Shown one piece after another: positions 40,741-64,000 of a stretch of DNA of 64,000 nt; the stretch's first letter is position 1, and each line of letters starts with the position of its first letter. The notes beneath the pieces are model-generated. The model was not told the DNA's origin, did no database searches, and was given only the letters and a program-made list of their open reading frames with translations. Source of the stretch: Phallusia mammillata. Lineage: Eukaryota. The stretch spans positions 32,364,001-32,428,000 of the forward strand of contig OZ281494.1 in the NCBI GenBank assembly GCA_965637545.1. The letters run 5' to 3'. The position numbers and the translations under genes are program-made.

Positions 40741-42864
40741 TTACTCGTAATAAAGTCCATAGATCATAGCGATTGCATAAAGCGATGTGTTTTGGTACCT
40801 AACAGTTGCGAAAGAATCGGTTTTATCATTCCACAAGCATCTACTACCTAAATAAACACCCGGTCTCTCCTTAATACTCCCAATACTAACAACTACAACG
40901 TGTTTGTATCTTTTGTAGTTCTTCGCCTTCAACGCTTCGGATATTTTGGCGGCTATGATTTGACACTCGGACCTACAAAGCTCCGGATCGTACGATTTGT
41001 CTCCGATGTGTTGTTTCAGAATGTTAGAGGCTGTTCCCTCGATTTCATAGGATTTAAAACGCGACTGCGGAAAACAAATGCAGGATATTAAACAAATCGT
41101 TCGTATACCGTCTGTTATATAACATGAGTATAGTGCAAACCAGAAAGCTATTCGGGCCGAAATCCGATTTGAACCAGTTTCAGGCTTAGTTTGAATCAAA
41201 TGGGCTTGGTGAGGGCCTGGTTTTACATTCGGCATAATTCATTAAAAAAATAAAACAAAACATTTTGTATTTAAAGTAGAGATGTACCGAATATTCGGTT
41301 TGCCGAATTTATTCGGCCGAATCGATCATTTTTGCAAAGATTCGGTTTCGGCCGAATAATTTGTTGCGATTCGGCCGAAACCGAATCTTTTACCAACACA
41401 AATTTTAAGCGTTAAACGTGTCTTTTCTGCTTATTAAGGTCCACGCAATCTTTCAAAAGTCCAAACATAACGAAAATTGCGTCAATGTTTATCTTTTTCA
41501 ACACATTATCGTTTTTCCCACGGTAGTCAAAAAAATTAGTAATTCATCGGCAAGTTGCCAATCATGCTTAAGGCAATTTTAAACCCCACAGAACTGAAAT
41601 AAGGACGAAACACAACTATTTTGCACTGGCTGCCTGGTAGATAAACATTTTTTTTTCACGTCAAACGCGAAGCGTACGACTTCGCGTGACGTCATAAATG
41701 ATTCGGTTGATTCGGCCGAATTTATTCGGCAAAACCGCCGAATATTCGGTTTCGGCCGAATCGAAATTTAGCCGATTCGGTACATCACTAATTTAAAGTA
41801 TTCGAGACAGGGAATTGTAAAAGTTACAGATATGCATTCATTCCTTGGATTGGTCGCAGTTCTGGATTAGTTAAAGGCCTAGAATAGATTTTTTGACGGT
41901 TTAACAGTCAGAGTTTGGAGCAGGGGTCGGCAACCCTGGCACGCGATGCAAATTTCCGTATGGCACGCCAAACGATTCGAATGTTTATTTCAAGTTATAC
42001 TTTAAACTGTTACACTACTTTTTTTGATTTGTACAGTCTTAAACATTTAATAGTCTTAAAACCCAGCCTACTCGCAAATAAAACTATTACTGAAAACAAC
42101 ATTGGCACGCTAAGTCATTACCACATGGAATGACAAGTAAATTGAAACGCTTTGCTTAAAAAGGTTGCTGGTCCCTGGTTAAGGGTCACGTTAAGTTTTT
42201 TTAAAAATTTAGGTATGACATCATAACTTACGTCAGGATCCATCTTGTACGTGTTTTCGTATTGTACTTTCTTGGGTTGCATGACAAACGACGCCTCACT
42301 AGCGCCCCTTTGTGATCGGATCTCGTCTGTTGCTAATAAAGAAAAAAAAATATTATATTTTTGTTTAGTACAGGTGACGTATCTAAACGAACGACGCGTG
42401 TAATCAGTAGAAAAAACAGAGTTTTTAATTACCGTGATTACTGTAAAAAAATAAATTTGGGAAAACACTATGCTAAACGTAATGCTGTCAAGATTTGCTG
42501 AGGAAATCCCCTAAAATGTAAAAGAAAGGAATTTAAAACGACAAAAACTCAATGATATCAAAAGGCTTTCTAGTGGTCTTATTGTACTACGTAGTTCCGA
42601 TGTACATTAATCACACATTTGATGTTTCCCTTGTTATTAAGTGACACTTGGAACTGTCATTGCAAACACTGGTTTTATTTTCAATGAGGACAAAAGTAAC
42701 ACTACTCCACGACTTATTGTACGCGTCAACTTTGGGAATCGAACCCACGACCTATGGATTAAACAAAACATCAAATCCTTACCATCGTCCATAGGAGAGT
42801 TGTCTGACGGAGCTAGAAGTTTTCCCTTTGACTTATCAAGCTTGACTTTCCGCGATTTATTCAT
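40741..42864 (-). CDS. Tctex1-domain dynein light chain (TCTEX1D1/DYNLT5-like), 166 aa, 3 coding exons
   Basis: Exons are 42864-42783, 42326-42232 and 41064-40741 (phases 1, 0; 501 nt). Family motifs: QYENTYKMDP, YDPELCR, RYKHVVVVSIG, GSRCLWNDKTDSF, SLYAIAMIYGLYYE*. The exact paralog is unresolved. Confidence 0.9.
41277..41790. mobile_element. Non-autonomous hAT element, 514 bp, in Tctex gene intron 2
   Basis: TIR TAGAGATGTACCGAAT / ATTCGGTACATCACTA (15/16). Perfect 8-bp TSD ATTTAAAG at 41269-41276 and 41791-41798. Many subterminal CCGAA/TTCGG repeats. Confidence 0.92.
41921..42177. mobile_element. Older Charlie-like hAT MITE, 257 bp, in Tctex gene intron 2
   Basis: Ends CAGGGGTCGGCAACC and GGTTGCTGGTCCCTG form an imperfect TIR. 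Flanks GTTTGGAG / GTTAAGGG match at 5/8 as a decayed TSD. Confidence 0.65.
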
Positions 42865-44882: not shown

Positions 44883-47311
44883 ATGACTCTGGTCAAAGCA
44901 GCAAGTGCCCATGAACTGTTAAAACGCCGCTTGTCAGAGTCTATTCGAGAAATAGGCGAAAATGGAAGGAAAAATAAAACCATGAACCACAGAGCTGCCC
45001 CAAACTTAATGTACAACCCCACACAGAATGAGCATTGGGCCAACACAGCTTCTCATGGGCTGATGGTGGTTCCAAGTATTCTTGCCAACGAACTGCTTGT
45101 TTGGAAATCGCAGCAAATTCGAAACACCTTGAATAATTGGAAAGACAGGTGATTATTGCTATTTATGCTAGTATTACTGTAATTATATTGCTACATTGCA
45201 ACTTTTGTATGTTGGGTAAAAACTGTTTTTAACATTAATAAAAATAGAACAGCATAGTGCTTGTATCTTGCATGTGATAAATTAATTCCATTGTATTGAT
45301 CTACTTTAGACCCAAGTTATTAATTTTAGCAATGAAGTAAGTGAAACAAATTTAATTTCCAAATGCACTTTGAAAAGTGAAACAGTTTGTTGTATACTTT
45401 AAACCCCCAAAAATGGCAAAAGCATGGAGCTACTTGATAATTAAGCTGCAGGCAGTGCACACTGTTTCAGCCTGTAAGATCTCATCAGTGTAGCTAGTGA
45501 CAATATATTGCCTGGATAGGCTAGTGTAGCCACATTACAGTGCTTCGGTGTGTCAGGATAAAAGCCAAAATTTTGATTTGCTGCTCTTTTTTGTTTCATC
45601 ATACTTATAAAACACACTGATATGTTGTTATTTTTCAGTTGTTCTGACGGAGACTTTAAAGAAAGTATCACCTCATATTGTTATGGCAACCAATCTCATC
45701 CAACATTTGCTGAGTTTGAGTTTACTTCTCGAACTTACGGTGCATCACTCATCAGTCTGTTTTTGATTTCAACATTGTACCATTGGATTTGTTGGACACA
45801 AAGTCAATGGAAGGTGAAAACAGGTTGTTTCTTCTTTCAATATGTTTCTGCTTGCAGATAATTCTGATTAGCTGAAATATTTACGATTGGCAAATTTGGG
45901 GTTCAATAAACTAGAAATATATATATAATGCATGTGTGTTTGTTACCCTATTAAATATTAAATTATAGTCTTGGAGTAATTGCTTAAAAGGTTTGGACTT
46001 AACAAACAACTATTTCCTCTTTAGGGCAGACATAAAGGTTGTGCCGAACGGCGCCCATCTCTCAACAAATCCTTCCACTACTGTGACAGAACAACTATTT
46101 ATTTCTTCATTGCTGGCTCATACACTCCTTGGTTAATGCTACGCAAGATTCACCCAAGCATTGTCTGGCTACAGTAAGACATACAGAATGCTAAATTTCC
46201 CTAAAATTATTACTTGACACTTAGTTTATTAATTGACACTAATTATTAATTGACACTAATTGCTTGAACATTTTGTTTGACTTTTTTAAACTAGCTTGAA
46301 ATTGGTGTTTTTAATATGCCAACTCGGTGCCATTTTTGAACAAATATGTAATTAGGTCAAAAATTATTTGTACAAATAAAAAAGTACACTTCCAATTTGG
46401 GCCAAACATCCATGGCAAAGGTGTAATCAGCTATGAAATCAAATTCAACAAAAAAGAGCTGCATCCTAAACTTATGCAACTGAATCTTGCTTTAAGGCTA
46501 ACAGTTTTGAGTGCTATAAATAATGAATAGAGCTTGTTACTACCTAGATCATGTATATTTTAAATAAACCCTTTTATAATTCTACAGATGGATTGTGTGG
46601 CTTGGTGCTGCTGGAGGGGTTACATATTCTTATTTGTTTTTTGAGAAATATAAGCTCTTGGACACTGTGCTTTACATCGTAGCTGGATTGTTTCCGGGCC
46701 TTGCCATGGTCTTGTTTCAGGCAGAAAACACTGTGTAAGTATGACAACATATGAGTTTTATCAACATACCAATATACTAATAAATGCACAACATTTGTTA
46801 AAGTACACAGCCAACTCTGTAAATGCTATATGTTATGCAGGGATATGTGGGATAAAAAAAGGGACAAGAAAATGTCAAAAGGGTGTAATGAGAATCCTAA
46901 TGGGCAAAATCGACATAAAAACTGATTTGCTTTTTTGTATTTTCGTTAAATATCATTTAGTAATCTGTCAATTACATATTTTGGCAAAAACATAATTAAA
47001 TCTAGGAGCGTACTATATTTTCAAGTAGGAAGTAAAGAGTGATAAAATACATTGTAGACGTTACCTTGCTAAACTAAAATAAAAAAACATGTCTTTTAAT
47101 TTATGACAAGTCTAACATTGTCTTTGTGTTTATCCATTTCAGATCAGGAATGCCCGAACTGGCCATTGGAGGGGCATTTTACCTGACTGGTGTGATATTT
47201 TTTAAGTGTGACGGCATACTACCCTATGCACATGCTATTTGGCATCTGTTTGTTGCTTGTGGTGCATTCACACACTACTATGGGATTTACTTTCATTTAT
47301 ATTCCCAATGA
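44883..47311 (+). CDS. MMD: MMD/MMD2 (PAQR11/10, haemolysin-III family) 7-TM protein, about 301 aa, 5 exons
   Basis: Exons are 44883-45148, 45639-45813, 46025-46173, 46588-46734 and 47143-47311 (phases 2, 0, 2, 2; 906 nt). Motifs: [59 protein letters not shown]. The start could alternatively be the in-frame ATG at 44982. Confidence 0.93.
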
Positions 47312-52430: not shown

Positions 52431-55400
52431 ATGGAAGCTGCTCATAAGGTTAGTGATTGCCAAAGTCACCAAATCTACTGTTACCGTCTTAAACCAAGAG
52501 CCTACAAAGCCACTACATGATAATTATAACTTTCTACTATTTTGAACAATACACATGGTTAGGGCTAGTGGGTTTGGGGTGAGGGTTTGTAATGAAAATA
52601 ATGCTATAATTTAATCTTCTATAGGACCTGGGTATGGTGCAGACTTTGCACAAGCTTAGCGCTGACTCAGTGTAGGCTAAGTTGGCTTGTAGTTTTAGTA
52701 GGCGGCATCCCCAAAATTTTGCTATTTGTTTAATGCATTCAGACATGGATCAAATATAGTACCTAGCACAGTCTGTGGTTGTAAAGTATAAAAGTATATT
52801 TTTTACTGTAGTTTGTAACCTTTTGTTTGCAGATAAGAAACTTCAAAGCCAATGAAATCAAATTCGTACATGGAAGAGGAGGTCATATTGGAACAGGCAC
52901 ATATGGTGTGGTGAGGCTTGCTTATCACAAAGTACATCAATGGCTGGCTGTAAAATGTCTCAAGGTCAATGTGGAAGAAAAGTGAGTATTTTTACCATTT
53001 AGTTTTCTGTGTGAAAACATGCATTTTTTATTAACAGACACTTGAATCCTGCACAAACCACTTAAACACACTTCTTTTATTTGAAATTCTGTACACTTAC
53101 TGAAAGATTCTATTATTTAGAGGGCCATTTAAAAAACATAAGCACATAACTGATAATAGCAAACTGATATTTTTTGATTGGTGTTAAGTTCATTTGCAGA
53201 ACAGAAACTTGTTGCCAAGGTCAAAAAGACCAGTTGTTGATAATCTGTCTTTGCTATAAATTAAAAAAAAACATTGTTGATTAGGTTGCATGATGAAGTA
53301 GGCCCTGTCCAAGAAGCAAATAACCCAAATGTCGTACGAGTGTTCGGTGTCTTAAAATCTCCACAAGTTATGGGAATGGTTATGGAATATTTACCAGGAA
53401 ACTGCCTTTCTGATTTGGCTTTTAACACTGAAATCCCTATTTCTCCTTTACTTTCCTTGAGATTTTGCCGAGATATCAGCAATGGAGTTGCAGGAATTCA
53501 CAATTTGCAGCCAGAAAAGCGACTAACCCATGGAGATTTAAAACTGGAAAACATACTACTGTCAAGTAACCTTGAATGCAAAATTGGCGATTTCGGCAGT
53601 TCAGAACTTGCATGGAATACTGGACATAACTCAGCTAGGGACAGAATGGAAAGAAATGATTTTACAGAAATATATGCTGCTCCTGAACGTCTGATGAATC
53701 CACACATGAAAATGAATACAGCAATGGATGTTTTTAGTATTGGCATGATCTTTTACTATCTATTGTGCCGTGAGCTTTGTGGTATGGACATATATTGCAT
53801 GCTTTTGCAGCAGGGTGGACGGCCAAGGATGGAAAAAATCAACAGTTTAAAACAAGCATTACAAAATGATCTTACCAGTTTAAAAATTATTCACACGATT
53901 GTAGCGCAGATAAAAAAATGCTGGGCACAGAATCCATTACATCGGCCGAAAATTTTGCAAATTAGAGACAACCTACAAAAGGAATTAGACCTATACAGTG
54001 ACACATGTATATTCCAATGTGTTCAAGCCACCCTTGAGAAATATGAAATTGCCAAACCCATTCTTGCAAACCACAATGATTGGATCCAAATTGAGGATTT
54101 AGGTATGTCATACCAAAATTGTATATACCTATCATGTGGAACAAACCAAAAACTGTCCTTGTGTTTGTAATATTTTTATCTTTAATATTTGGATTTAAAA
54201 AAATGGATTTAACCTTTTTTATGATGGTGTTGAACACAAGATTCCACTAGGCCAGGGCAATTGAGCTCAGTAATTAGGGTTAGAACTGACAATTTCGTAA
54301 GCCAAGGGATTTGCACTAGCCCACCAGTTACCTATGTGTTATGTTTTTCTGTAATTTCTGCAAGTAAGTTTAATGATAGTGCCAAATTGCAGATTTCCAC
54401 TCTAAACCATCACAGAGCTAAACCTAATCTGGTATGCAATGGAACATGGCTTAAGACCTTAACAAAGATAATTATTTGTACACAGATATCAATCTACAAA
54501 GTAAAGATGAAAATAATGTCACTCAAGACCGCACTGAAAGCATCAACGTTTTTCCTCTGTCTCCAGCAGCTGGTAATTACAACAAAATGATTAAATTTTG
54601 CAACAAAATATGCATAAAAGCTGCCTATACTTACTTTAGGGGTAAGAGATATTGAAGATACAACCTCACCAAAGGCAGTTCTCCAAACTTTTCTCTCTAG
54701 TTCAGGAGACTTACTCACAAATGGTAAATAAGTGATTAGATATTGTGAAGCTGGTTCAGTAACTATCTTGTGACAAGCCGGAGCATTGTTTACAATGCTC
54801 AGTTAAGCCTTTTTGGTAATTTTCTGAAAAGTTTATTATTATTAGCCATACTGATGTGTTGTTATGTTTACCAATTTAATGAGCTCAAAATAAAACATAT
54901 ATAAAGATATGTACAAAAACATTGTTCAAAGAGGTGATTCTAGCAATTTGTCAGCATTTTATCCACTTGTCAGCATTTTATCCACTTTTTTATTTGTCAG
55001 CATTTTATTCACTTTTTTAGACTTCGAACCGAATAACACTACATCACCCAAAGTTGTTTGCTCTTCAAATCGAAATGCTCCTGAAACAAGATGCGGACTA
55101 CAGTCTTCAGGTAAAAAGCACACTTATACTTTTTTACTACTTCATGTTCTGCAAGGGCTTAAAATATTTGAAATTTTTCAGACTCCGCATCCAATGACAC
55201 AACAGCACCAAAGGATGTTTTTTCTTCAAATGAATATGAAACATACACTGTACAACAACCAAGTGGTAAACAATTTATTTTATAATGCAACAGATTTTAT
55301 AAAAAATGTTTCCATTCTTTTTCAATTTCTTATATAACCAATATTCACTATATGTTTATCTTCTATTTTGCAGGGTTTAATTGCAATCTAACAGAACCAA

Positions 55401-56875
55401 AGATTGTTTTTCCTCCAAATGGAAATGAAAGAAGCACCAGACAACACCATACTGGTAAACTATTCGATAATACAATTTAATTGCACAGACTTGTTTTGCA
55501 TGGGCCTTTTCTTTTGTGACAAATGGACACCTTTTAGCATTAGTTATGATAGCAACCATTGGTCGTGTTTACCCACAATGCACCAACCTCACTTTCTTGT
55601 GAGCATGAGTCACATGTTGCTTTATAATACAGTGTACCTGCAGCGCATTTAGCCATTATTCTTTGGGCCCTTCACTGTTTCACATTCTAAAATGTTTTTA
55701 TCTTACACAGCTATATATGGCTTTGTGATTGTTTTAGTGCTTTTTTGTCGTTACTAGTTTTTTAACCAAGTGAAATAAACTCAACTCACCCATTTTTTTT
55801 TCAGGATTCAATCCCAATGATGCAACTGCTCCAAAGGTTGTATTTCCTCCAAGTGAAGCTACAGAAGAAGAAACCACCAGACAACACCCAGATGGTAAGC
55901 ATATTTTAGTGCTAAAATTAACAACTTCAAGTAACTGTAATCATAGTATGCCAGGCCTAATGATGGCGTCATACCAAATAATCGTAAGGCAATGCATAGG
56001 GTAAAAAAGACTCATGTTCTACTCACTGAGCTATCCAGGCTGTCTAAGCCTTTAAAAAATCAAATCACAAGCACTTTTCATATGCTGCACATGTCAGCTT
56101 CATTGTAGGTAATCGCATGTTTGATCATATGCATTCTTTTAGATAGTCAACTGTTTTGAAATGTACTGCTTTTTGTACCTTTAAATTCACATAACCTTTT
56201 TGCACTTGCAAAAAGCTTCCATTCTAAACCATAAATATGCAGTATGTAAATCGGAAATTATGTTGGTTTATTGCATCTATTTTAAAATGTAACAAATGTA
56301 CATGTGTTTAATTTTTAGATCAACCAAATGATTTGGAAACAGCACTGCTCATGACCCGAATGACATTGGATATCACTGTTAGCAACAATGACTGTACGTT
56401 GTCTACAAAAAGAAACGTTTGGACAGAAATAAACAAATTTTGTAAAGCTGCAACAACACACATCCAATCTCATCACAACCAAGATGGGCGAATTCTTCAA
56501 TCAGTCAAAACTATTTTAGAGAAAGTCAGAAACCTACCTTTCAATGTTAGGTTTAAATCATTGCTTGAGGCAAAGTTATTGTGCTTTTTAGCGGACTGTT
56601 ATTTGCACTTCAGTGAGTTTGGTGAAGCAATGGTCATGGCAACTCAGGCAAAATCACTTTTGGACGCCTTTACTGAACAATCAGAAAAGTTATCATTATT
56701 CCCCTGTTGTAACCACATCATTGGGAGAGCTTACATAGGCTTGGGTCGCAATAAAGAAGCCGAACAAGTCATTTTTAATGCCATATCAATGACTGAACAA
56801 AGCGAAGATTTTGGAAGTACAGAACAAAAAAATGCTGCCCTACGAAATTTACATCAATTACTCTATACATGCTAA
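52431..56875 (+). CDS. RIPK-like (TKL group) Ser/Thr kinase with five repeat exons and a C-terminal TPR-like domain, about 656 aa, 9 exons
   Basis: Exons are 52431-52448 (start, less certain), 52833-52981, 53285-54102, 54640-54723, 55021-55110, 55182-55265, 55374-55454, 55805-55894 and 56319-56875, all GT-AG and in frame (1971 nt). Kinase motifs: GTGTYG, LAVK, HGDLKLENILL, KIGDFG, YAAPE, DVFSIG, CW...P..RP. Two TPR-like motifs: FLADCYLHFSEFGEA and IIGRAYIGLGRNKEA. Confidence 0.85.
54948..55020 (+). repeat. Three TTGTCAGCATTTTAT(C/T)CAC units ending at the exon-5 splice acceptor of the kinase
   Basis: Directly visible tandem repeat. Confidence 0.8.
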
Positions 56876-58289
56876 ATTTTTGTTGATTTAAAATGTGGTG
56901 ATAATCTTCAAATTGTGTGACATGATATATGCAATCTTTTTAGTTTAATGATTATGTGTTTTATTGTACATATTTGATGAGATGTGTAAGTGTGTTTTCA
57001 TGAATTCTGTTTCAGCTTTTATCACTTTTTATTCGTTTTGAAGATGCATTATGTATTTTTTTTTATCTGTGTTTGCATTTTTACTGTTTTCTCAATGCTC
57101 TTTTGCTGTTACATCAAAATGGGTAGATCTGTTTTATGAGGAAGTGTAAACTTAATTAATAATGAAACCAACTTTTGAAGTGCGCAAAATGGTGCATTTT
57201 TGTGTTGTTAGTATGCTGGTTTGAAAATAAATAAATAAAAATTGTTTGATGAAACACTATTGCCAAAAGCGGCGTCAACTGGACATATTTATAGCCACGT
57301 TTTAGATTGTTCTAAAGTTATTTTATTCAGCTAACAACAATGTCAAAATGTGACACTTTTTGTCATGTTTTCTATTATTATCACATGGATTTCTTAAACT
57401 AAGTGCGTTCATGCTTGTCTAAGTAACGTGTACAATTATCCCGATATAGACGAGTGAACTAATGACAATGACGATTCTTAAAATGTCTACATTACGTTTA
57501 GTGATGTTCTGTGTCATAGAAGCTCTCTGGTAGTATTGTTTTTGATCAAGAAAAAGCATAATTAATTAAGGTCGTGTGACCGCTGCAAATGCTCGTTTTT
57601 TCAGAAACAAGATCTTCGGTAACCAGTGCATAAGGCGGAAAACACATGTTACAGTGCTCTTTGGATCATACAAATGTCACAAAAACTTGTTCAATTAAGG
57701 CAATGGTTTTCTTTAAAGGTTAACCCAGCAACCTGTAACCAACTTCTGACCTTGGAAATTTAAAAAATGATACAACAGACTTGCAATAAAACATGCAACT
57801 TTACGGTGGATGAGCATGACGGACTGTAGCGTTGGACCTGCATCAAGGATAAAAAAGAGAAACCCAGGTAATTTTGGCGGCAAGTAGTTTATCGCTAATT
57901 GACAGTCAGCGTCAAACTGTTGCCGTCCAATCGTCCATAAGCTGCTAACATGGCAAAGGCACTTGGAGCCTTTCTTATGTGGGATAGTTCAACGCCAAGC
58001 GTCATAACTGCTGCCGACTTGGAATTGATTAGAATTTGATTCAGCAAATAATGTGGTATGTTTATGTCTTGTATAATCGCGTTTTCTTTGGTGCGAAAAA
58101 GGAAAGCAATACACGTCACGGATGACTAAACTCCAGAGGAAGGAAAGCCAACGCACTGTTTTGTTTGGTGTCGTCATACAGTCAAGAGTCAACCTCTGTT
58201 CATGTGGCAAACGTTATCAAAGAGGAACTAATTTTTCGAAAGCGGAACCAACCTCTTTTGTGTACTCTTTGCACCAGCTGCAGTTGTAA

Positions 58290-58500: not shown

Positions 58501-59828
58501 TCTTTATTCAGTTCCTAACAGGATCCTTACAAAAAACAGCAAGGGAAACATAAACTAGTTAAACCAGACTGAATTACGCAAACAATTTTGAAGCGTCGGA
58601 CATAACAGGTGGGGAAAAACTGTCATTTTTTCTGTTGCGGCCGCCTGACAACCTAAACCGGAACTGACGCACGTCGATTGGCAACAAATGTTTCGACAGT
58701 GGGACTTTCCCCCAGTGGAAACTAGACTCCCGCAGGCAGCCTTTTTCTTTAAAACACCAGACGATCATACACCGAGCGCGTCTACCTCTGCGCGTGACTT
58801 TTAGTATTCATGAAGAGAGTTTACCTTCTGAATAGGCGGCTGGGGACAGGTCGCACAAAGTAGGAAACAAAGGTTAAGGTGCGGCGATTGACAAACAGCT
58901 GAATTGTAGCGTTGCAAGGTTTCCTGAACACAGTGTTCAAATGTCCTTATCAGCTGTGTTTGTGGGTTGGCAAATTGCATGGTTTTAACGATCAGTTTAA
59001 AGTAGAGATTCGGCGAATCGGCAAAAATTGGGTTAGGCTGAAACCAAATTGTCGGCAGTTTTGACAGCACCGAATCATTTGACGTCACGCGAAATCGTAC
59101 GCTACGGGCTCGAACTAGTTTTCCTACTAGACAAACCGTGCAGAATAGTTGTGTTTCATTGTCATTCTGTTTCTGTGGGGTTTGAATTAATGAATTACTT
59201 TACGCATTTTTAGTTATTGGATAGTTTAAAAGATTGTGTGGTACCTTATAAAGCAGAAAAAAACAATTACGTTTGAAATTTGTGTTCTTAAAAGATTTAG
59301 TTTTGACCAAATCCTAATTAATTATGTGAACGAAACCAAATCATTGCAAAAAAGGCCAATTCGGCTGAATATATTGAGCAAACCGAATACTCGGCAGATC
59401 TTTGATTAAAAGGCAACAAAATTAATGTAAAATTAGGTTTCATGCAAAGATGTTGGTTTGTCCGTTTTTTTTTTATTGCTGTTGAAACCATAAATTGTGT
59501 GCTTTACATAAGCAAACACAAAAACTTTTCATTTTCTTTTAGTTGTTTAGGTTTAGGCAAACTGAACTATGTGTGAAAAACAATGTCCATAAAGGGATAC
59601 ATTATTTCATTAGCTCCTCTGTTTGAAGAATTTTTATCTAATGGAGAGTTGAAGGATATTTGTGGAAATTTGTACAGAAATCGTATTCTCACATCTGGTT
59701 AGTAGTGCTTTTATAAACTTGGCATGTCTTTTTTTAGAATCAGATTACGCTACCCTAGACTGAAACCTAAACCTGTACAATGGTCAGACTGAAAACTTTG
59801 ACAAGTCTGAAGTCGTCCACCGTTTTAT

Positions 59829-59873
59829 TAGACATATATATTTCGCCTAAGTAATAGGCATCGTCAGTATCTA
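59829..59873 (-). ncRNA. Minimal type-I hammerhead ribozyme (Penelope pLTR copy 1)
   Basis: UAGAUA-CUGACGA-U-GCCUA(UUACU)UAGGC-GAAA-UAUAUA-UGUCUA: 6-bp stem I, conserved core, 5-bp stem II, palindromic AUAUAU stem III. Predicted cleavage is after AUA. Confidence 0.82.
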
Positions 59874-60137
59874 AAAACAAAACAGCGCTAAAAAATGGTA
59901 TGCAGGTATAACTATAAAGCACAAACAAAACATATTAAAAACTGCTGACAGTAAGGTAGAACTAGGACCTGCAGATGGCGCGGCCAAACACGCACTAGTA
60001 AAGATGGAAAGAAAAGGAAAAACGCTCAATCTGTGGCGCGGGGCAAAAGAAGGTAGATAAGGACGGCAGAAGCGTTGTAAAAACCAATGGCGGAAACACT
60101 GATAAAAATGAACGCGTAGGAATAAACAAATAAAATG

Positions 60138-62981
60138 TTATTTAATGTAGGGTAAAAACATTTTTTGTAAGTTTATTTCAGCTCCAATCTTGCTGGCCCA
60201 CTTACTTTCATAGATGTCCAGTAGATGGATAGGTGGCTGCTCCAAAAACTGCACCCGAAAACACGTGCTGATAGGGTCACGGGCGTTGGCGCTATGCTCT
60301 GTGGCATAGTGCTGACAAAGGGCTGCCTTTTCGTTATAATCACCCGGTTTGAAAGAATTCCACATAGATCTGTGTCCCGTCCAACGTACTGAAAACTTAT
60401 TTTTTGTTTGACCGACATACTGCTTTTGGCATATTGTGCAGGTGGCAGCATATATGCCATAGTTGCGGCATGTGAGTGTTTGCCGTAACTTTGTTACACC
60501 CTTTTTGCTTTCTATGTTAGTGGTATAGTCAACCATTCCTTTGTGATTTCCAAAGTGTCCACACAAAGCACAGTGTCCACAAGGTGCAGATGAGCCCCCA
60601 ATAGGCATGGAACTGTTTTTCCCGACTTGCGCTAGCCGTCTGTAGCGGGTAAGGAGGTTTCCGAGTGTTGGTGGTCGTTTGTATGTTATTGTGATATTTT
60701 TTACCAAACTTCGGTCTTTTGCGGAAGGTTGTAGTAGTAATGGAAAGCTCGTTGCCCAAACATTCAGAGCCTTTTGCGAGCTGTTGCCATTCGAGGGTGG
60801 AAATCTGTTTGTCCACATACTTGCTTTTTCAATGACGTCATTTGTCATTGACGTAGGGAAGCAGGATAGTTTGGCTTTGATACGCAGTTTGCCAAGGCTG
60901 GCTCTGAAATCATCGTCACGTTCGTTTAAGCGCCGTAGTCGTTTTGACTCTCCATGTATAATGGACTTAAAAACGGAAGGAGGGTGGTGGGACCATCCGT
61001 TTAAAAATCGTCGGCCGGTTGCGGTGTCTTTGACGTAGTCTGTTGTTTTAAATTTAAATTTATTCTGTCGGCTGATGACGTGGTTTACATCCAGAAATGG
61101 AATATGCCCCTCGGTTTGGGCGGTTGTAAGGTAGTTGTGGGTTATTTCCAAACCGTGAGTGGCAAACACGCTCTCGATACCCCTAATGGTTGTTCTGAAG
61201 ATATCGTAGCCAAAACAGAGATAAATCATATCGTCAATGAACCTCATGAACAGTTCTGTTCTTTGTATAAAGCACGCTGCCTGCACCATGATATAATGAA
61301 CGCCAATGTTGGCGAGCGAGACAGAATGGTTGTCACCAGTTACGATGCCCTTTTTCTGAGTGTAAAAATTGTCCCCGTGTTTGAGGATGGCATTTTCCAA
61401 ACATAAGAATGTTAGTTCGATGAGGTTTTCTATACTATGTTTGCTGAAGTTGCTCTCCGTTGCAAGCGCGTCTTTAAGCGCCGCACGCAGGTGCGACCGG
61501 TCCATGTTGTTGTAAAGTGATTTGACATCTGCTGTTACGATAAACAGAGGCGTATCCGCAAGTTGTTTTTCAATTGTTGATGTTGTCTTTTCCTTCCAAT
61601 TTAAAAGTTCACGTAAATAATGAGAACTGTCCCGGCAGTACTCAGGAACAACGGCTTGGTTGTATGAGACACTTATTGGCTTTAACAGATATTCTAAGAA
61701 CGCTGTAATTCTGGACATGGGTGTGTGACTCAGCGATTGCAGCAACCGAACAGGTATTTCACTGACGTCCATCTCTACCAGTTGCTTCAAACCCACCTTG
61801 TGCGTTTTGAACAAGGGATAGGCGTATGATGGTGTACAACATGAAAAGTGCTTAGCCGAGGGGCCAGGAACATGTTGATAGCTATTTCCCTTGCATTTTA
61901 TACCGAGTGTGTGCCATAGCATTATGTCGCTTAAAACGTTATCTCTGTGAAGGTTTATGATTTTTTCTTCACACTTCTTTTTGGCCCGAGAAAGGTTTCC
62001 TAAGTATACTTCAGAGGAATATTCCAGCTTGACGTGTGTTTCGAGCGATTTTTCCATAACCTGTTGGTAGTCTTCATAGTCAATGATTATGATTTTGCCA
62101 TCCTTGTCCGATTTGCAAATGACAATTGTGTGGCTTGATGTCAGGCGAATCAGCTTGCGTAGACTCCACTTCATGCTGGTATTAAGGTTGCATCGTTGGT
62201 GATACCGTTGCATTACCTTTGTTCCTAATTGACGCAGCTTGGCGAAGGCAATATCACCATAAACTTTAATGGCGTCACCAAGAAGGTCTTTATGTGGTCT
62301 GGAGTATTTTTGCACTTTTAGTTTTTCGGGTATCGCTGGTTCTTGGTGATTTTCTTCGAACAGTGAACTCCACTCGAGCCTCCGAACATGTTGGTAGGCA
62401 TTTAACCACTCGCGATTTTCAATTGTTTCCGTCCACCGTGGTGTAGGAGCGAAATTGAGACCGTAACTAAGCAACAGCTTGTCGTTAAAATCCAATGTCA
62501 CGGAGGACTTATTGATAACGGTTTGTCCTAGGTTGTCGACTAACGCTGCTTTTCTTAACGTATCACGTCGGTTGTTGTATCTTTTTCTATCTTTCTTGTT
62601 TCTCCTGTTTTTTGACGTATTTCTGTAATTGGTGGGTGTTTTGAATTGAGATAAATTGGTCATTAAGCGCGTTTTTTCCTGTTTTCTGTATAAAAAGTTG
62701 AATTTCCTGATATGTTTCCGTTTACATGTCACATTGGCGTATCTTAATTGTTCCCGATCAACCTTCGTAAGATTGTGCCAAGAAGGTTCTATTTTGGCCG
62801 CTGCGTTTTGCAGTCGAGGAAGGTCTTTAGCAATTCTTCTCTGTTGTTGAATTAAAAGCAAGTCAAAATCCATACCCTTGCGTTGGTTTGATGGCAGTAG
62901 AACGTTGCATGATAAACAACGTTTGAGCAAGACCGTCCTTTGTTTGTACGATACGTACTGCAAGAACTGCTTGTTGGTCAT
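60138..62981 (-). CDS. Penelope-like reverse transcriptase + GIY-YIG endonuclease, intact 947-aa ORF
   Basis: LSYGLNFAPTP, KSDKDGKIIIIDYEDY, FKTHK, TADVKSLY, QKKGIVTG, RFIDD, IPFLDV, SHHP; linker CGHCALC; YGIYAATCTICQKQYVGQT...RWTGH. Confidence 0.95.
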   Translation of the reverse strand: MTNKQFLQYVSYKQRTVLLKRCLSCNVLLPSNQRKGMDFDLLLIQQQRRIAKDLPRLQNAAAKIEPSWHNLTKVDREQLRYANVTCKRKHIRKFNFLYRKQEKTRLMTNLSQFKTPTNYRNTSKNRRNKKDRKRYNNRRDTLRKAALVDNLGQTVINKSSVTLDFNDKLLLSYGLNFAPTPRWTETIENREWLNAYQHVRRLEWSSLFEENHQEPAIPEKLKVQKYSRPHKDLLGDAIKVYGDIAFAKLRQLGTKVMQRYHQRCNLNTSMKWSLRKLIRLTSSHTIVICKSDKDGKIIIIDYEDYQQVMEKSLETHVKLEYSSEVYLGNLSRAKKKCEEKIINLHRDNVLSDIMLWHTLGIKCKGNSYQHVPGPSAKHFSCCTPSYAYPLFKTHKVGLKQLVEMDVSEIPVRLLQSLSHTPMSRITAFLEYLLKPISVSYNQAVVPEYCRDSSHYLRELLNWKEKTTSTIEKQLADTPLFIVTADVKSLYNNMDRSHLRAALKDALATESNFSKHSIENLIELTFLCLENAILKHGDNFYTQKKGIVTGDNHSVSLANIGVHYIMVQAACFIQRTELFMRFIDDMIYLCFGYDIFRTTIRGIESVFATHGLEITHNYLTTAQTEGHIPFLDVNHVISRQNKFKFKTTDYVKDTATGRRFLNGWSHHPPSVFKSIIHGESKRLRRLNERDDDFRASLGKLRIKAKLSCFPTSMTNDVIEKASMWTNRFPPSNGNSSQKALNVWATSFPLLLQPSAKDRSLVKNITITYKRPPTLGNLLTRYRRLAQVGKNSSMPIGGSSAPCGHCALCGHFGNHKGMVDYTTNIESKKGVTKLRQTLTCRNYGIYAATCTICQKQYVGQTKNKFSVRWTGHRSMWNSFKPGDYNEKAALCQHYATEHSANARDPISTCFRVQFLEQPPIHLLDIYESKWASKIGAEINLQKMFLPYIK

Positions 62982-63139
62982 ACTGAGCTACACAGGACGT
63001 CGCTGCTTGTAGACAATAAACTGTGTAGTATATTATAAATCACGAGTCACCAGAGACTCAGTACGACAGATGGAGACAACAGTCGCATATAATAACAGAC
63101 TGAAAACTTTGACAAGTCTGAAGTCGTCCACCGTTTTAT

Positions 63140-63184
63140 TAGACATATATATTTCGCCTAAGTAATAGGCATCGTCAGTATCTA
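63140..63184 (-). ncRNA. Minimal type-I hammerhead ribozyme (Penelope pLTR copy 2)
   Basis: Identical to 59829-59873 and 3311 nt upstream on the sense strand, about 160 nt before the ORF ATG. Confidence 0.82.
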
Positions 63185-63448
63185 AAAACAAAACAGCGCT
63201 AAAAAATGGTATGCAGGTATAACTATAAAGCACAAACAAAACATATTAAAAACTGCTGACAGTAAGGTAGAACTAGGACCTGCAGATGGCGCGGCCAAAC
63301 ACGCACTAGTAAAGATGGAAAGAAAAGGAAAAACGCTCAATCTGTGGCGCGGGGCAAAAGAAGGTAGATAAGGACGGCAGAAGCGTTGTAAAAACCAATG
63401 GCGGAAACACTGATAAAAATGAACGCGTAGGAATAAACAAATAAAATG

Positions 63449-64000
63449 TTATTTAATGTAGGGTAAAAACATTTTTTGTAAGTTTATTTCAGCTCCAATC
63501 TTGCTGGCCCACTTACTTTCATAGATGTCCAGTAGATGGATAGGTGGCTGCTCCAAAAAATGCACCCGAAAACACGTGCTGATAGGGTCACGGGCGTTGG
63601 CGCTATGCTCTGTGGCATAGTGCTGACAAAGGGCTGCCTTTTCGTTATAATCACCCGGTTTGAAAGAATTCCACATAGATCTGTGTCCCGTCCAACGTAC
63701 TGAAAACTTATTTTTTGTTTGACCGACATACTGCTTTTGGCATATTGTGCAGGTGGCAGCATATATGCCATAGTTGCGGCATGTGAGTGTTTGCCGTAAC
63801 TTTGTTACACCCTTTTTGCTTTCTATGTTAGTGGTATAGTCAACCATTCCTTTGTGATTTCCAAAGTGTCCACACAAAGCACAGTGTCCACAAGGTGCAG
63901 ATGAGCCCCCAATAGGCATGGAACTGTTTTCCCCGACTTGCGCTAGCCGTCTGTAGCGGGTAAGGAGGTTTCCGAGTGTTGGTGGTCGTTTGTATGTTAT
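63449..64000 (-). CDS. 3' part (linker + GIY-YIG) of the second tandem Penelope copy, 5'-truncated by the window edge
   Basis: Near-identical to 60138-60689, differing by Q>H and K>E substitutions. Confidence 0.85.
   Translation of the reverse strand: MTYKRPPTLGNLLTRYRRLAQVGENSSMPIGGSSAPCGHCALCGHFGNHKGMVDYTTNIESKKGVTKLRQTLTCRNYGIYAATCTICQKQYVGQTKNKFSVRWTGHRSMWNSFKPGDYNEKAALCQHYATEHSANARDPISTCFRVHFLEQPPIHLLDIYESKWASKIGAEINLQKMFLPYIK

What the first reader, a model, noticed from the sequence alone, without database searches (positions are those of the whole stretch)
54640..55894. Five homologous, symmetric phase-1 mini-exons forming a potential combinatorial cassette array
Exons of 84, 90, 84, 81 and 90 nt are all multiples of 3 and phase 1-1. 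They encode GVRDIEDTTSPKAVL.., DFEPNNTTSPKVVC.., DSASNDTTAPKDVF.., GFNCNLTEPKIVFPP..TRQHH and GFNPNDATAPKVVFPP..TRQHP, with consensus F-x-P-N-D-T-T-x-P-K-V-V-F. They arose by exon duplication, and any subset can be skipped in frame (up to 32 isoforms). The last two contain KIVF and KVVF, matching the PP1-docking RVxF consensus; the first two carry proline-directed SP sites. Splicing or copy number could therefore tune phosphatase recruitment or oligomerisation of the kinase (hypothesis).
Basis: partly seen in the sequence, partly recalled or inferred. Interest (0 to 1): 0.8.

Follow-up and report, generated by a model that had tools for sequence, protein, structure and literature searches.

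The report
Duplicated mini-exons in kinase linker
Five short, related coding pieces really do sit in a row inside a sea-squirt kinase gene, but they look like an ordinary repeated flexible linker made by exon duplication, and nothing I could run shows that they are mixed and matched or that they recruit a phosphatase.

Summary
Five AG/GT-flanked, phase 1-1 exons of 84, 90, 84, 81 and 90 nt lie at the stated coordinates, and they are homologous: E2-E5 strongly, E1 only in its core.

They form most of the 173-residue acidic, Ser/Thr/Asn/Pro-rich linker of a 10-exon, 685-codon gene. That gene encodes a RIPK-like kinase with a short TPR-like tail. It is a divergent member of a sea-squirt family with at least 142 kinase-exon matches in this genome, which the scan had already flagged on other DNA.

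Phase 1-1 is not special to this array. Every linker exon I mapped in relatives is 1-1 (five Clavelina genes and one paralogue in this genome), and their number varies from 1 to 7.

The paralogue on contig C4 has its own array of homologous 66-nt mini-exons, and a public Phallusia protein contains all of them. Conversely, one Clavelina relative has an 84-nt linker exon annotated as skipped.

The window's exons therefore could be cassettes, but no RNA data were available.

The PP1 idea is weak. KIVF and KVVF fit only the loose RVxF pattern, which 37% of relatives also match, and they fail the stricter patterns.

Verdict: real tandem exon duplication, an ordinary kind, with a speculative function.

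The parts
52431..52448 (+). Exon 1: ATG plus 5 codons, phase 0 to 0
   Evidence: Gene model. Clavelina relatives have a matching short first exon of 6-21 nt.
52833..52981 (+). Exon 2: kinase N-lobe start (GTGTYG loop, LAVK lysine), phase 0 to 2
   Evidence: tblastn of relatives' N-termini hits 52830-52982. Pfam Pkinase match is weak.
53285..54102 (+). Exon 3: main kinase exon (HGDLKLEN, DFG, APE), phase 2 to 1
   Evidence: Pfam Pkinase 2.6e-28. Nearest solved structure is RIPK2, 2.2e-19. Motifs.
54486..54572 (+). E0: 87-nt phase 1-1 linker exon, not detectably homologous to the five
54640..54723 (+). E1: 84-nt phase 1-1 repeat exon, homologous in the core only (DTTSPKAVL)
55021..55110 (+). E2: 90-nt phase 1-1 repeat exon
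55182..55265 (+). E3: 84-nt phase 1-1 repeat exon
55374..55454 (+). E4: 81-nt phase 1-1 repeat exon (KIVF)
55805..55894 (+). E5: 90-nt phase 1-1 repeat exon (KVVF)
56319..56875 (+). Last exon: 184-residue TPR-like tail plus stop codon, phase 1 to 0
   Evidence: Weak Pfam TPR_8 match. Aligns to the TPR region of Clavelina P0132 at E 4e-9. Single copy in the genome. No further family exons downstream. An AATAAA-type signal lies near 57227.
54948..55019 (+). Intronic tandem repeat (19/27-nt unit) whose last copy supplies the T-rich tract and AG of the E2 acceptor

Best explanation
The five exons are tandem duplicates of one ancestral linker mini-exon. The gene encodes a cytosolic RIPK-like Ser/Thr kinase joined to a short TPR-like tail.

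Shown:
- In this sea-squirt gene family the kinase exon always ends in phase 1 and the C-terminal domain exon always starts in phase 1.
- Any exon placed between them must therefore be phase 1-1 and can be gained, duplicated or lost without breaking the frame.
- Different family members carry 1 to 7 such exons.
- This gene expanded one of them to five copies, plus an unrelated sixth.

Inferred:
- Most likely all are spliced in together.
- The product would be a 173-residue, acidic, Ser/Thr/Asn/Pro-rich, probably disordered tether. It carries five copies of a short T-x-P-K-x-V core, a repeated short motif or phospho-acceptor cluster with an unknown partner.
- Copy number, set by evolution rather than by splicing, fixes the reach and valency between the kinase and its docking domain.
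For: Gene model:
- One open 685-codon frame across 10 GT-AG exons.
- Intact kinase motifs. Pfam Pkinase 2.6e-28.
- The exon-phase scaffold is identical to five Clavelina lepadiformis gene models: 0-0, 0-2, 2-1, then n exons of 1-1, then the C-terminal exons. There n is 2, 1, 4, 1 and 6.

Duplication:
- Peptide and DNA similarity are far above shuffles.
- The profile finds only these five sites in the genome.
- No decayed copies lie in the introns.
- Introns are not alignable.

Family trait and co-inclusion:
- A paralogue on contig C4 has seven 1-1 linker mini-exons, five of them homologous 66-nt units.
- A public Phallusia mammillata protein (CAB3227504.1, 96% identical in the kinase exon) contains all seven in series.

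Linker composition: mean hydropathy -0.94, 72% polar or disorder-promoting residues, net charge -13.
Against: - No transcript data for this gene exist in any collection I could reach, so inclusion of all five is inferred, not seen.
- One Clavelina relative has an 84-nt linker mini-exon annotated as present in isoform X1 and absent in X2, so skipping occurs in the family.
- Among E3, E4 and E5, synonymous sites differ little (pS 0.18-0.31) and third codon positions vary no more than first and second, yet the flanking introns show no similarity. That pattern is not what a plain neutral linker predicts. It could mean RNA-level constraint or gene conversion.
- Disorder is judged from composition only. 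The joined protein was not folded.
Confidence: 0.68

Rival explanations
1. Regulated cassette array: individual exons E1-E5 are skipped in tissue- or challenge-specific combinations. This would give isoforms with different numbers of the core motif.
For: - All exons are symmetric, so any subset keeps the frame.
- A family precedent exists: Clavelina LOC143451280 isoforms X1 and X2 differ by exactly one 84-nt phase 1-1 linker exon.
- Synonymous divergence among E3-E5 is low although the introns are unalignable. This would fit splicing-signal constraint.
Against: - No RNA evidence.
- Splice-site scores lie within the ordinary range of family introns (22nd-98th percentile). They do not separate the known Clavelina cassette exon either.
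- Of about 30 clusters of relatives checked for annotated isoforms, only one shows a skipped linker exon.
- The public Phallusia protein contains all seven linker mini-exons of a paralogue.
- The symmetry is explained by the family scaffold.
Confidence: 0.15
2. PP1 docking: KIVF in E4 and KVVF in E5 are RVxF motifs that recruit protein phosphatase 1 to the kinase.
For: Both fit [RK]x0-1[VI]{P}[FW] and lie in a probably disordered region.
Against: - The loose pattern is expected 0.71 times per shuffled copy of this protein, and 50% of shuffles have at least one.
- 56 of 150 relatives carry it.
- PMC4794898 states that it occurs by chance in about 25% of proteins.
- Neither site fits the 5-residue stringent pattern or the extended [KR][KR][ACHKMNQRSTV]V[CHKNQRST][FW] pattern.
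- The two hits are duplicates of each other, not independent.
- The other three copies (KAVL, KVVC, KDVF) do not fit.
Confidence: 0.04
3. Mutually exclusive exon cluster: only one of the homologous exons enters each mRNA, as in Dscam-type arrays.
For: Tandem duplicated homologous exons are the classic substrate for mutually exclusive splicing (PMC9013439).
Against: - All lengths are multiples of 3, so joint inclusion is not penalised.
- Introns are at least 67 nt, so steric exclusion is not expected.
- I found no shared selector or docking complementarity. The one 33-nt inverted repeat brackets the whole array and is not the best duplex in the pre-mRNA.
- The paralogue's homologous mini-exons are co-included in a public protein.
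Confidence: 0.03
4. Not functional exons: the gene is a decaying paralogue, or the mini-exons are chance open frames.
For: - No transcript or protein record for this gene in the 1.84-billion-protein library.
- dN/dS is about 1 or higher among E3-E5.
Against: - An uninterrupted 685-codon frame across 10 exons, with intact catalytic motifs.
- Only the correct frame is open in all five.
- Exons are conserved while introns are not.
- Older pairs show dN/dS of 0.3-0.7.
- The scaffold matches annotated relatives.
Confidence: 0.06

Closest known systems
Tandem exon duplication in animal genes (about 10% of animal genes, as reviewed in PMC9013439)
   Same: Adjacent homologous exons in one gene, on the same strand, each with its own splice sites and frame-compatible.
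   Different: Many textbook cases are mutually exclusive pairs inside folded domains. Here there are five copies in a linker that is probably disordered and are most likely all included.
Sea-squirt RIPK-like kinase - mini-exon linker - C-terminal repeat-domain family (Clavelina LOC143448618, LOC143447220, LOC143451280; Phallusia CAB3227504.1)
   Same: Same exon-phase scaffold, with the kinase in one large 2-to-1 exon and the linker built of phase 1-1 mini-exons. The tail aligns weakly to the Clavelina TPR region (E 4e-9).
   Different: - The kinase is only 31-41% identical to any relative, and no orthologue was found.
- The TPR tail is short (184 residues, one exon).
- The repeat sequence is private to this gene, apart from an 8-residue N-x-T-x-P-K-x-V core shared with some C4-cluster paralogues.
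Vertebrate RIPK2 / RIPK1 / RIPK3
   Same: Nearest solved kinase domains (RIPK2 2.2e-19, RIPK1 1.5e-12, RIPK3 2e-11).
   Different: - No CARD or death domain found by Pfam in the exons scanned (the mini-exon linker was not scanned), and no RHIM core anywhere in the model by regex.
- Non-RD catalytic loop (HGD).
- TPR-like tail instead.
Dscam-type mutually exclusive exon clusters
   Same: A tandem array of homologous exons.
   Different: Unequal lengths that are all multiples of 3. No convincing competing RNA structures. No evidence of one-only choice.
PP1-interacting proteins with an RVxF motif
   Same: KIVF and KVVF fit the loose consensus in a flexible region.
   Different: They fail the stricter consensus patterns, have no basic residues upstream, and are not enriched above chance.

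Membership tests
Tandemly duplicated exon array | Adjacent exons of one gene with sequence similarity beyond chance | tested here: met
   Among E2-E5, peptide z is 4.9-9.9 and DNA z is 3.8-16.8; E1 is weaker. Profile hits have E 7.7e-12 to 7.1e-7.
Tandemly duplicated exon array | Each copy has its own acceptor and donor and keeps the reading frame | tested here: met
   All copies are AG...GTAA-flanked, phase 1-1, and lie in one open 685-codon frame.
Cassette (skipped) exons / combinatorial splicing | Transcripts both with and without the exon | not testable with these tools
   No transcript or protein of this gene is in the libraries. The only precedent is in a Clavelina relative.
Cassette (skipped) exons / combinatorial splicing | Exon length a multiple of 3, with symmetric phase | tested here: met
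   The same holds for every linker exon mapped in the family.
Cassette (skipped) exons / combinatorial splicing | Weaker splice sites than constitutive neighbours | tested here: inconclusive
   A rough position-weight matrix from 47 family introns puts these sites at the 22nd-98th percentile. The known cassette exon is not separated either.
Mutually exclusive exon cluster | A mechanism enforcing one-only choice (frame incompatibility, steric hindrance, or docking/selector RNA pairing) | tested here: not met
   All lengths are multiples of 3 and introns are 67-424 nt. No shared selector was found.
PP1-binding RVxF protein | Loose consensus [RK]x0-1[VI]{P}[FW] | tested here: met
   KIVF at residue 453 and KVVF at residue 481.
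PP1-binding RVxF protein | Stringent or extended consensus ([HKR][ACHKMNQRSTV]V[CHKNQRST][FW], or the same with [KR][KR] in front) | tested here: not met
   No match. The extended pattern is from PMC4794898; the 5-residue pattern is from my own knowledge.
PP1-binding RVxF protein | Physical binding to the PP1 catalytic subunit | not tested
   No complex prediction was run, because I do not claim binding.
RIPK-like (TKL-group) protein kinase | Protein kinase fold with catalytic motifs, nearest to RIP kinases | tested here: met
   Pfam Pkinase 2.6e-28. RIPK2 is the top solved structure. GTGTYG, HGDLKLEN, DFG and APE are present.
RIPK-like (TKL-group) protein kinase | RHIM, CARD or death domain as in vertebrate RIPK1-3 | tested here: not met
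   Pfam finds no such domain in the three exons scanned (exon 2, kinase exon, tail); the mini-exon linker was not scanned. The regex finds no [IV]Q[IVLC]G core anywhere in the model.
Sea-squirt kinase - mini-exon linker - repeat-domain family | Exon-phase scaffold 0-0 / 0-2 / 2-1 / n x (1-1) / 1-... | tested here: met
   The window model against five Clavelina models.
Sea-squirt kinase - mini-exon linker - repeat-domain family | C-terminal helical TPR-like domain homologous to relatives | tested here: met
   BLASTP E 4e-9 to P0132 residues 488-675 and phmmer 6e-9. Pfam TPR matches are sub-threshold only.

The most novel reading that the evidence does not exclude
The phase-1 linker slot of this expanded, immune-type sea-squirt kinase family is a tunable module. 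Arrays of mini-exons carrying a short N-x-T-x-P-K-x-V type motif would be varied in number by duplication between paralogues and haplotypes and by exon skipping within a gene. That would set how many copies of an unknown partner, or how many phosphorylation sites, sit between the kinase and its sensor or docking domain.
Probability: 0.1. Interest if true: 0.6.

Novelty: new member of a known kind. Interest (0 to 1): 0.3.

Why it matters
On its own this is a clean but ordinary example of tandem exon duplication lengthening a flexible linker.

Its wider value is as one data point on how a very large sea-squirt kinase family diversifies. I found no paper on this family with the single literature search I ran. 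The kinase exon ends in phase 1, the downstream domain (TPR here, Kelch or other elsewhere) begins in phase 1, and between them mini-exons are freely added, duplicated and occasionally skipped.

If the repeated core proved to be a binding or phosphorylation motif, linker copy number would be a simple handle on signalling strength in a candidate innate-immune kinase family.

Tried and rejected
- **Word search with the C-terminal exon**: no hit in the length range allowed. This says nothing about longer proteins.
- **Big HMMER search with the kinase exon**: no self hit and no orthologue. The best is 35-41% identity, plus one 47-51% fragment too short to reach the linker. Conservation in orthologues therefore could not be tested.
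- **Repeat profile against the 150 best relatives**: nothing.
- **E0 as a sixth repeat copy**: rejected (z at most 1.3).
- **Decayed extra copies in the long introns**: none.
- **Intron homology between units**: none detectable.
- **Splice-site strength as a discriminator**: uninformative.
- **Inverted repeat bracketing the array** (54591-54623 with 55889-55921, -17 kcal/mol). It stands out against shuffles, but it is not among the 12 best duplexes listed from the scan of the pre-mRNA, which run from -19.9 to -24 kcal/mol. I treat it as unproven.
- **Ab initio listing of mini-exons downstream of other paralogues**: too noisy. Direct-repeat scans of two paralogues gave only single pairs.
- **N-x-T-x-P-K core as a family-wide motif**: 2 sense against 1 antisense hits in 20 downstream regions, so not family-wide.
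- **RHIM and TRAF6-type motifs**: no RHIM, and one low-information P-x-E match in E5.
- **Literature search for the family**: nothing relevant.
- **The joined 685-residue model**: used only inside local scripts, for the frame check, motif counts and composition. For that reason the linker was not folded and no complex prediction with PP1 was run.
Full report
**What is there.** The window has no N, is AT-rich and has short GT-AG introns. It is not human. Earlier notes of this scan call the genome a sea squirt. I confirmed that in part:
- The nearest named proteins are all ascidian: Clavelina, Ciona and Phallusia.
- A Phallusia mammillata protein matches a paralogue in this genome at 96% identity.
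- Clavelina proteins reach only 38-39%.

The genome is therefore Phallusia or a close relative.

Their lengths are 84, 90, 84, 81 and 90 nt. Each follows a T-rich tract ending in AG and precedes GTAA. Only the phase-1 frame is open in all five.

**Gene model.** I joined the neighbouring exons in a local script only. This gives a 10-exon, 685-codon open frame on the + strand:
- a short ATG exon (52431-52448);
- a 0-to-2 exon with the glycine loop and catalytic lysine (52833-52981);
- one large 2-to-1 kinase exon (53285-54102);
- six consecutive phase 1-1 mini-exons: E0 at 54486-54572, then E1-E5;
- a last 1-to-0 exon (56319-56875), followed by a poly(A)-type signal near 57227.

The kinase exon matches Pfam Pkinase at 2.6e-28. 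It keeps GTGTYG, HGDLKLEN, DFG and APE. It is closest to RIPK2, then RIPK1, TAK1 and RIPK3 among solved structures. The tail is weakly TPR-like and aligns to the TPR region of a Clavelina relative at E 4e-9. No further family exons lie downstream.

**Are the five exons homologous?** Yes.
- Peptide alignment scores against 2000 shuffles give z 4.9-9.9 among E2-E5.
- E1 gives z 3.1-5.0 against E2, E3 and E5, and only 2.1 against E4. E0 is not related.
- T, P, K and V of a T-x-P-K-x-V core are invariant.
- At the DNA level the exon z-scores reach 16.8.
- The flanking 55 nt of intron and the whole introns give z near 0.
- A profile of the five finds only these five places in the 240-Mb genome.
- nhmmer finds no decayed copies in the long introns, and finds E1 only in its core.

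I mapped public Clavelina lepadiformis protein models onto their own loci. All five share the scaffold short exon / 0-2 / kinase 2-1 / n x (1-1) / C-terminal exons. The linker exons are:
- 120 and 81 nt;
- 216 nt, or 207 nt by an alternative acceptor;
- 99, 126, 156 and 135 nt;
- 102 nt;
- 72, 60, 114, 84, 60 and 60 nt.

The symmetry of the window's exons is therefore inherited from a family-wide phase-1 slot between the kinase and the downstream domain. That downstream domain is TPR here and in several relatives. It is Kelch in the Phallusia protein P0034 and something else in LOC143451280. This is what phase-1 exon shuffling would produce.

In this genome the kinase exon has at least 142 matches at 28-43% identity, in tandem clusters on contigs C2, C4, C1, C6 and others. 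Earlier notes of this scan describe the same family on other DNA.

**Repeated mini-exon arrays elsewhere in the family.**
- The two linker exons of Clavelina P0132 look like duplicates of each other.
- The paralogue on C4 that matches the Phallusia protein has seven phase 1-1 linker mini-exons of 66, 51, 66, 66, 66, 66 and 54 nt. Five are homologous (P-x-x-E-A-S-x-S-x-L-N-L-T-Q-x-x-S-x-E-I). The public protein contains all seven in series.
- I could not check whether that record rests on cDNA.
- The window's repeats share only an 8-residue core with these (N-L-T-E-P-K-I-V against N-L-T-Q-P-K-S-V). The best pair gives z 5.6 and the others 2-3.4.
- In 20 other paralogues the strict core appears twice in sense frames, both in the C4 cluster, against once in antisense. 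The core is not family-wide.

**Alternative splicing.** No transcript or protein of this gene is in the libraries I could search, so use of the exons cannot be seen directly. The indirect evidence points both ways.

For skipping:
- Clavelina LOC143451280 isoforms X1 and X2 differ by exactly one 84-nt phase 1-1 linker exon.

Against a general cassette design:
- That is the only case among about 30 clusters of relatives inspected. The other annotated differences are an alternative acceptor at a linker exon, N-terminal truncations, and 1-6-residue changes that I did not map to exons.
- The Phallusia record co-includes all repeats.
- A rough splice-site matrix puts the window's sites in the ordinary range.
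- No selector-type RNA pairing was found.

**PP1.** KIVF and KVVF match [RK]x0-1[VI]{P}[FW].
- That pattern is expected 0.71 times per shuffled copy of this protein, and half of the shuffles have at least one.
- It occurs in 56 of 150 relatives.
- PMC4794898 says it occurs by chance in about 25% of proteins, which is why that paper uses an extended pattern. The window's sites fail that pattern, and they also fail a 5-residue stringent pattern that I recalled from memory.
- The two hits are copies of each other, and three of the five repeats do not fit.

**Selection.** Older pairs involving E1 or E2 have dN/dS of 0.3-0.7. This supports coding constraint. Among E3, E4 and E5, pS is only 0.18-0.31, dN/dS is 1.1-2.4, and differences are spread evenly over codon positions. 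Yet their introns are unalignable. I cannot explain this with confidence. The candidates are exonic splicing signals in very short exons, gene conversion limited to exons, or heavy indel turnover in introns. The counts are small, about 17 synonymous sites per pair.

**Most likely function.** The linker has mean hydropathy -0.94, 72% polar or disorder-promoting residues and net charge -13. I read it as a flexible tether whose length and motif valency were raised by exon duplication. The T-x-P-K-x-V core would be a short linear motif or phospho-acceptor with an unknown partner. This last step is inference.

**Limits.**
- No orthologue was found.

**Verdict.** The kind is ordinary: tandem exon duplication in a phase-1 linker slot. 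The family context is interesting but already flagged by the scan. The combinatorial-cassette and PP1 readings are unsupported.

Noticed in passing
window 60138-62981 (-), 63449-63919 (-), 59767-60029 and 63033-63340: A 947-codon open frame with reverse transcriptase and a GIY-YIG nuclease match, which looks like a Penelope-like retroelement. A partial second copy and repeated flanking segments follow it, so the arrangement is tandem. Another first-stage note on this window reports hammerheads here.
   Followed up: partly
window 54948-55019: A 19/27-nt tandem repeat (TTGTCAGCATTTTATCCAC...) fills the end of the intron before E2. Its last copy provides the T-rich tract and the AG of the E2 acceptor.
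   Followed up: partly
window 54591-54623 and 55889-55921: A 33-nt, 76% complementary inverted repeat brackets the whole E1-E5 array: one arm in the intron before E1, the other on the E5 donor and the intron start. The duplex is about -17 kcal/mol. It is unusual against shuffles but is not among the 12 best duplexes listed from the pre-mRNA scan. It could favour skipping or back-splicing of the block, or it could be chance.
   Followed up: partly
window 55182-55894 (E3, E4, E5): Synonymous sites of the three youngest copies are much less diverged (pS 0.18-0.31) than the unalignable introns around them, and dN/dS is 1 or higher. This is unexplained. It may reflect splicing-signal constraint, exon-limited gene conversion or intron turnover.
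   Followed up: partly
G000 contigs C2 (0.7-4.3 Mb), C4 (0.5-2.8 Mb), C1 (33-36 Mb), C6 (9.8 Mb): At least 142 matches to the kinase exon at 28-43% identity, mostly single large exons in tandem clusters. This is a very large lineage-specific kinase expansion. The window's gene is a divergent outlier, and its TPR tail is single-copy.
   Followed up: partly
L033 (G000 C4:2328000-2337999, reverse strand) and protein P0034: A paralogue joins the same kinase and a seven-mini-exon linker to a Kelch beta-propeller instead of TPRs (Pfam Kelch_1 2.5e-53). The downstream domain of the family is therefore interchangeable. An extra repeat-like piece (SSSEINLTQ) at about 1983-2012 of the reversed locus is not in the public protein.
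   Followed up: partly
L030 (Clavelina OX392442.1, LOC143451280): The C-terminal part of this relative is an internal duplication of a seven-exon block. The exon sizes 140, 110, 157, 138, 117, 175/172 and 130/136 nt recur with the same phases.
   Followed up: no
window 40741-41235 (-) and 47126-47311 (+): An open frame with a Tctex-1 dynein light-chain domain (4.9e-25), and the last exon of a gene related to haemolysin-III (PAQR-type; weak, 9e-4). Both lie upstream of the kinase gene.
   Followed up: partly
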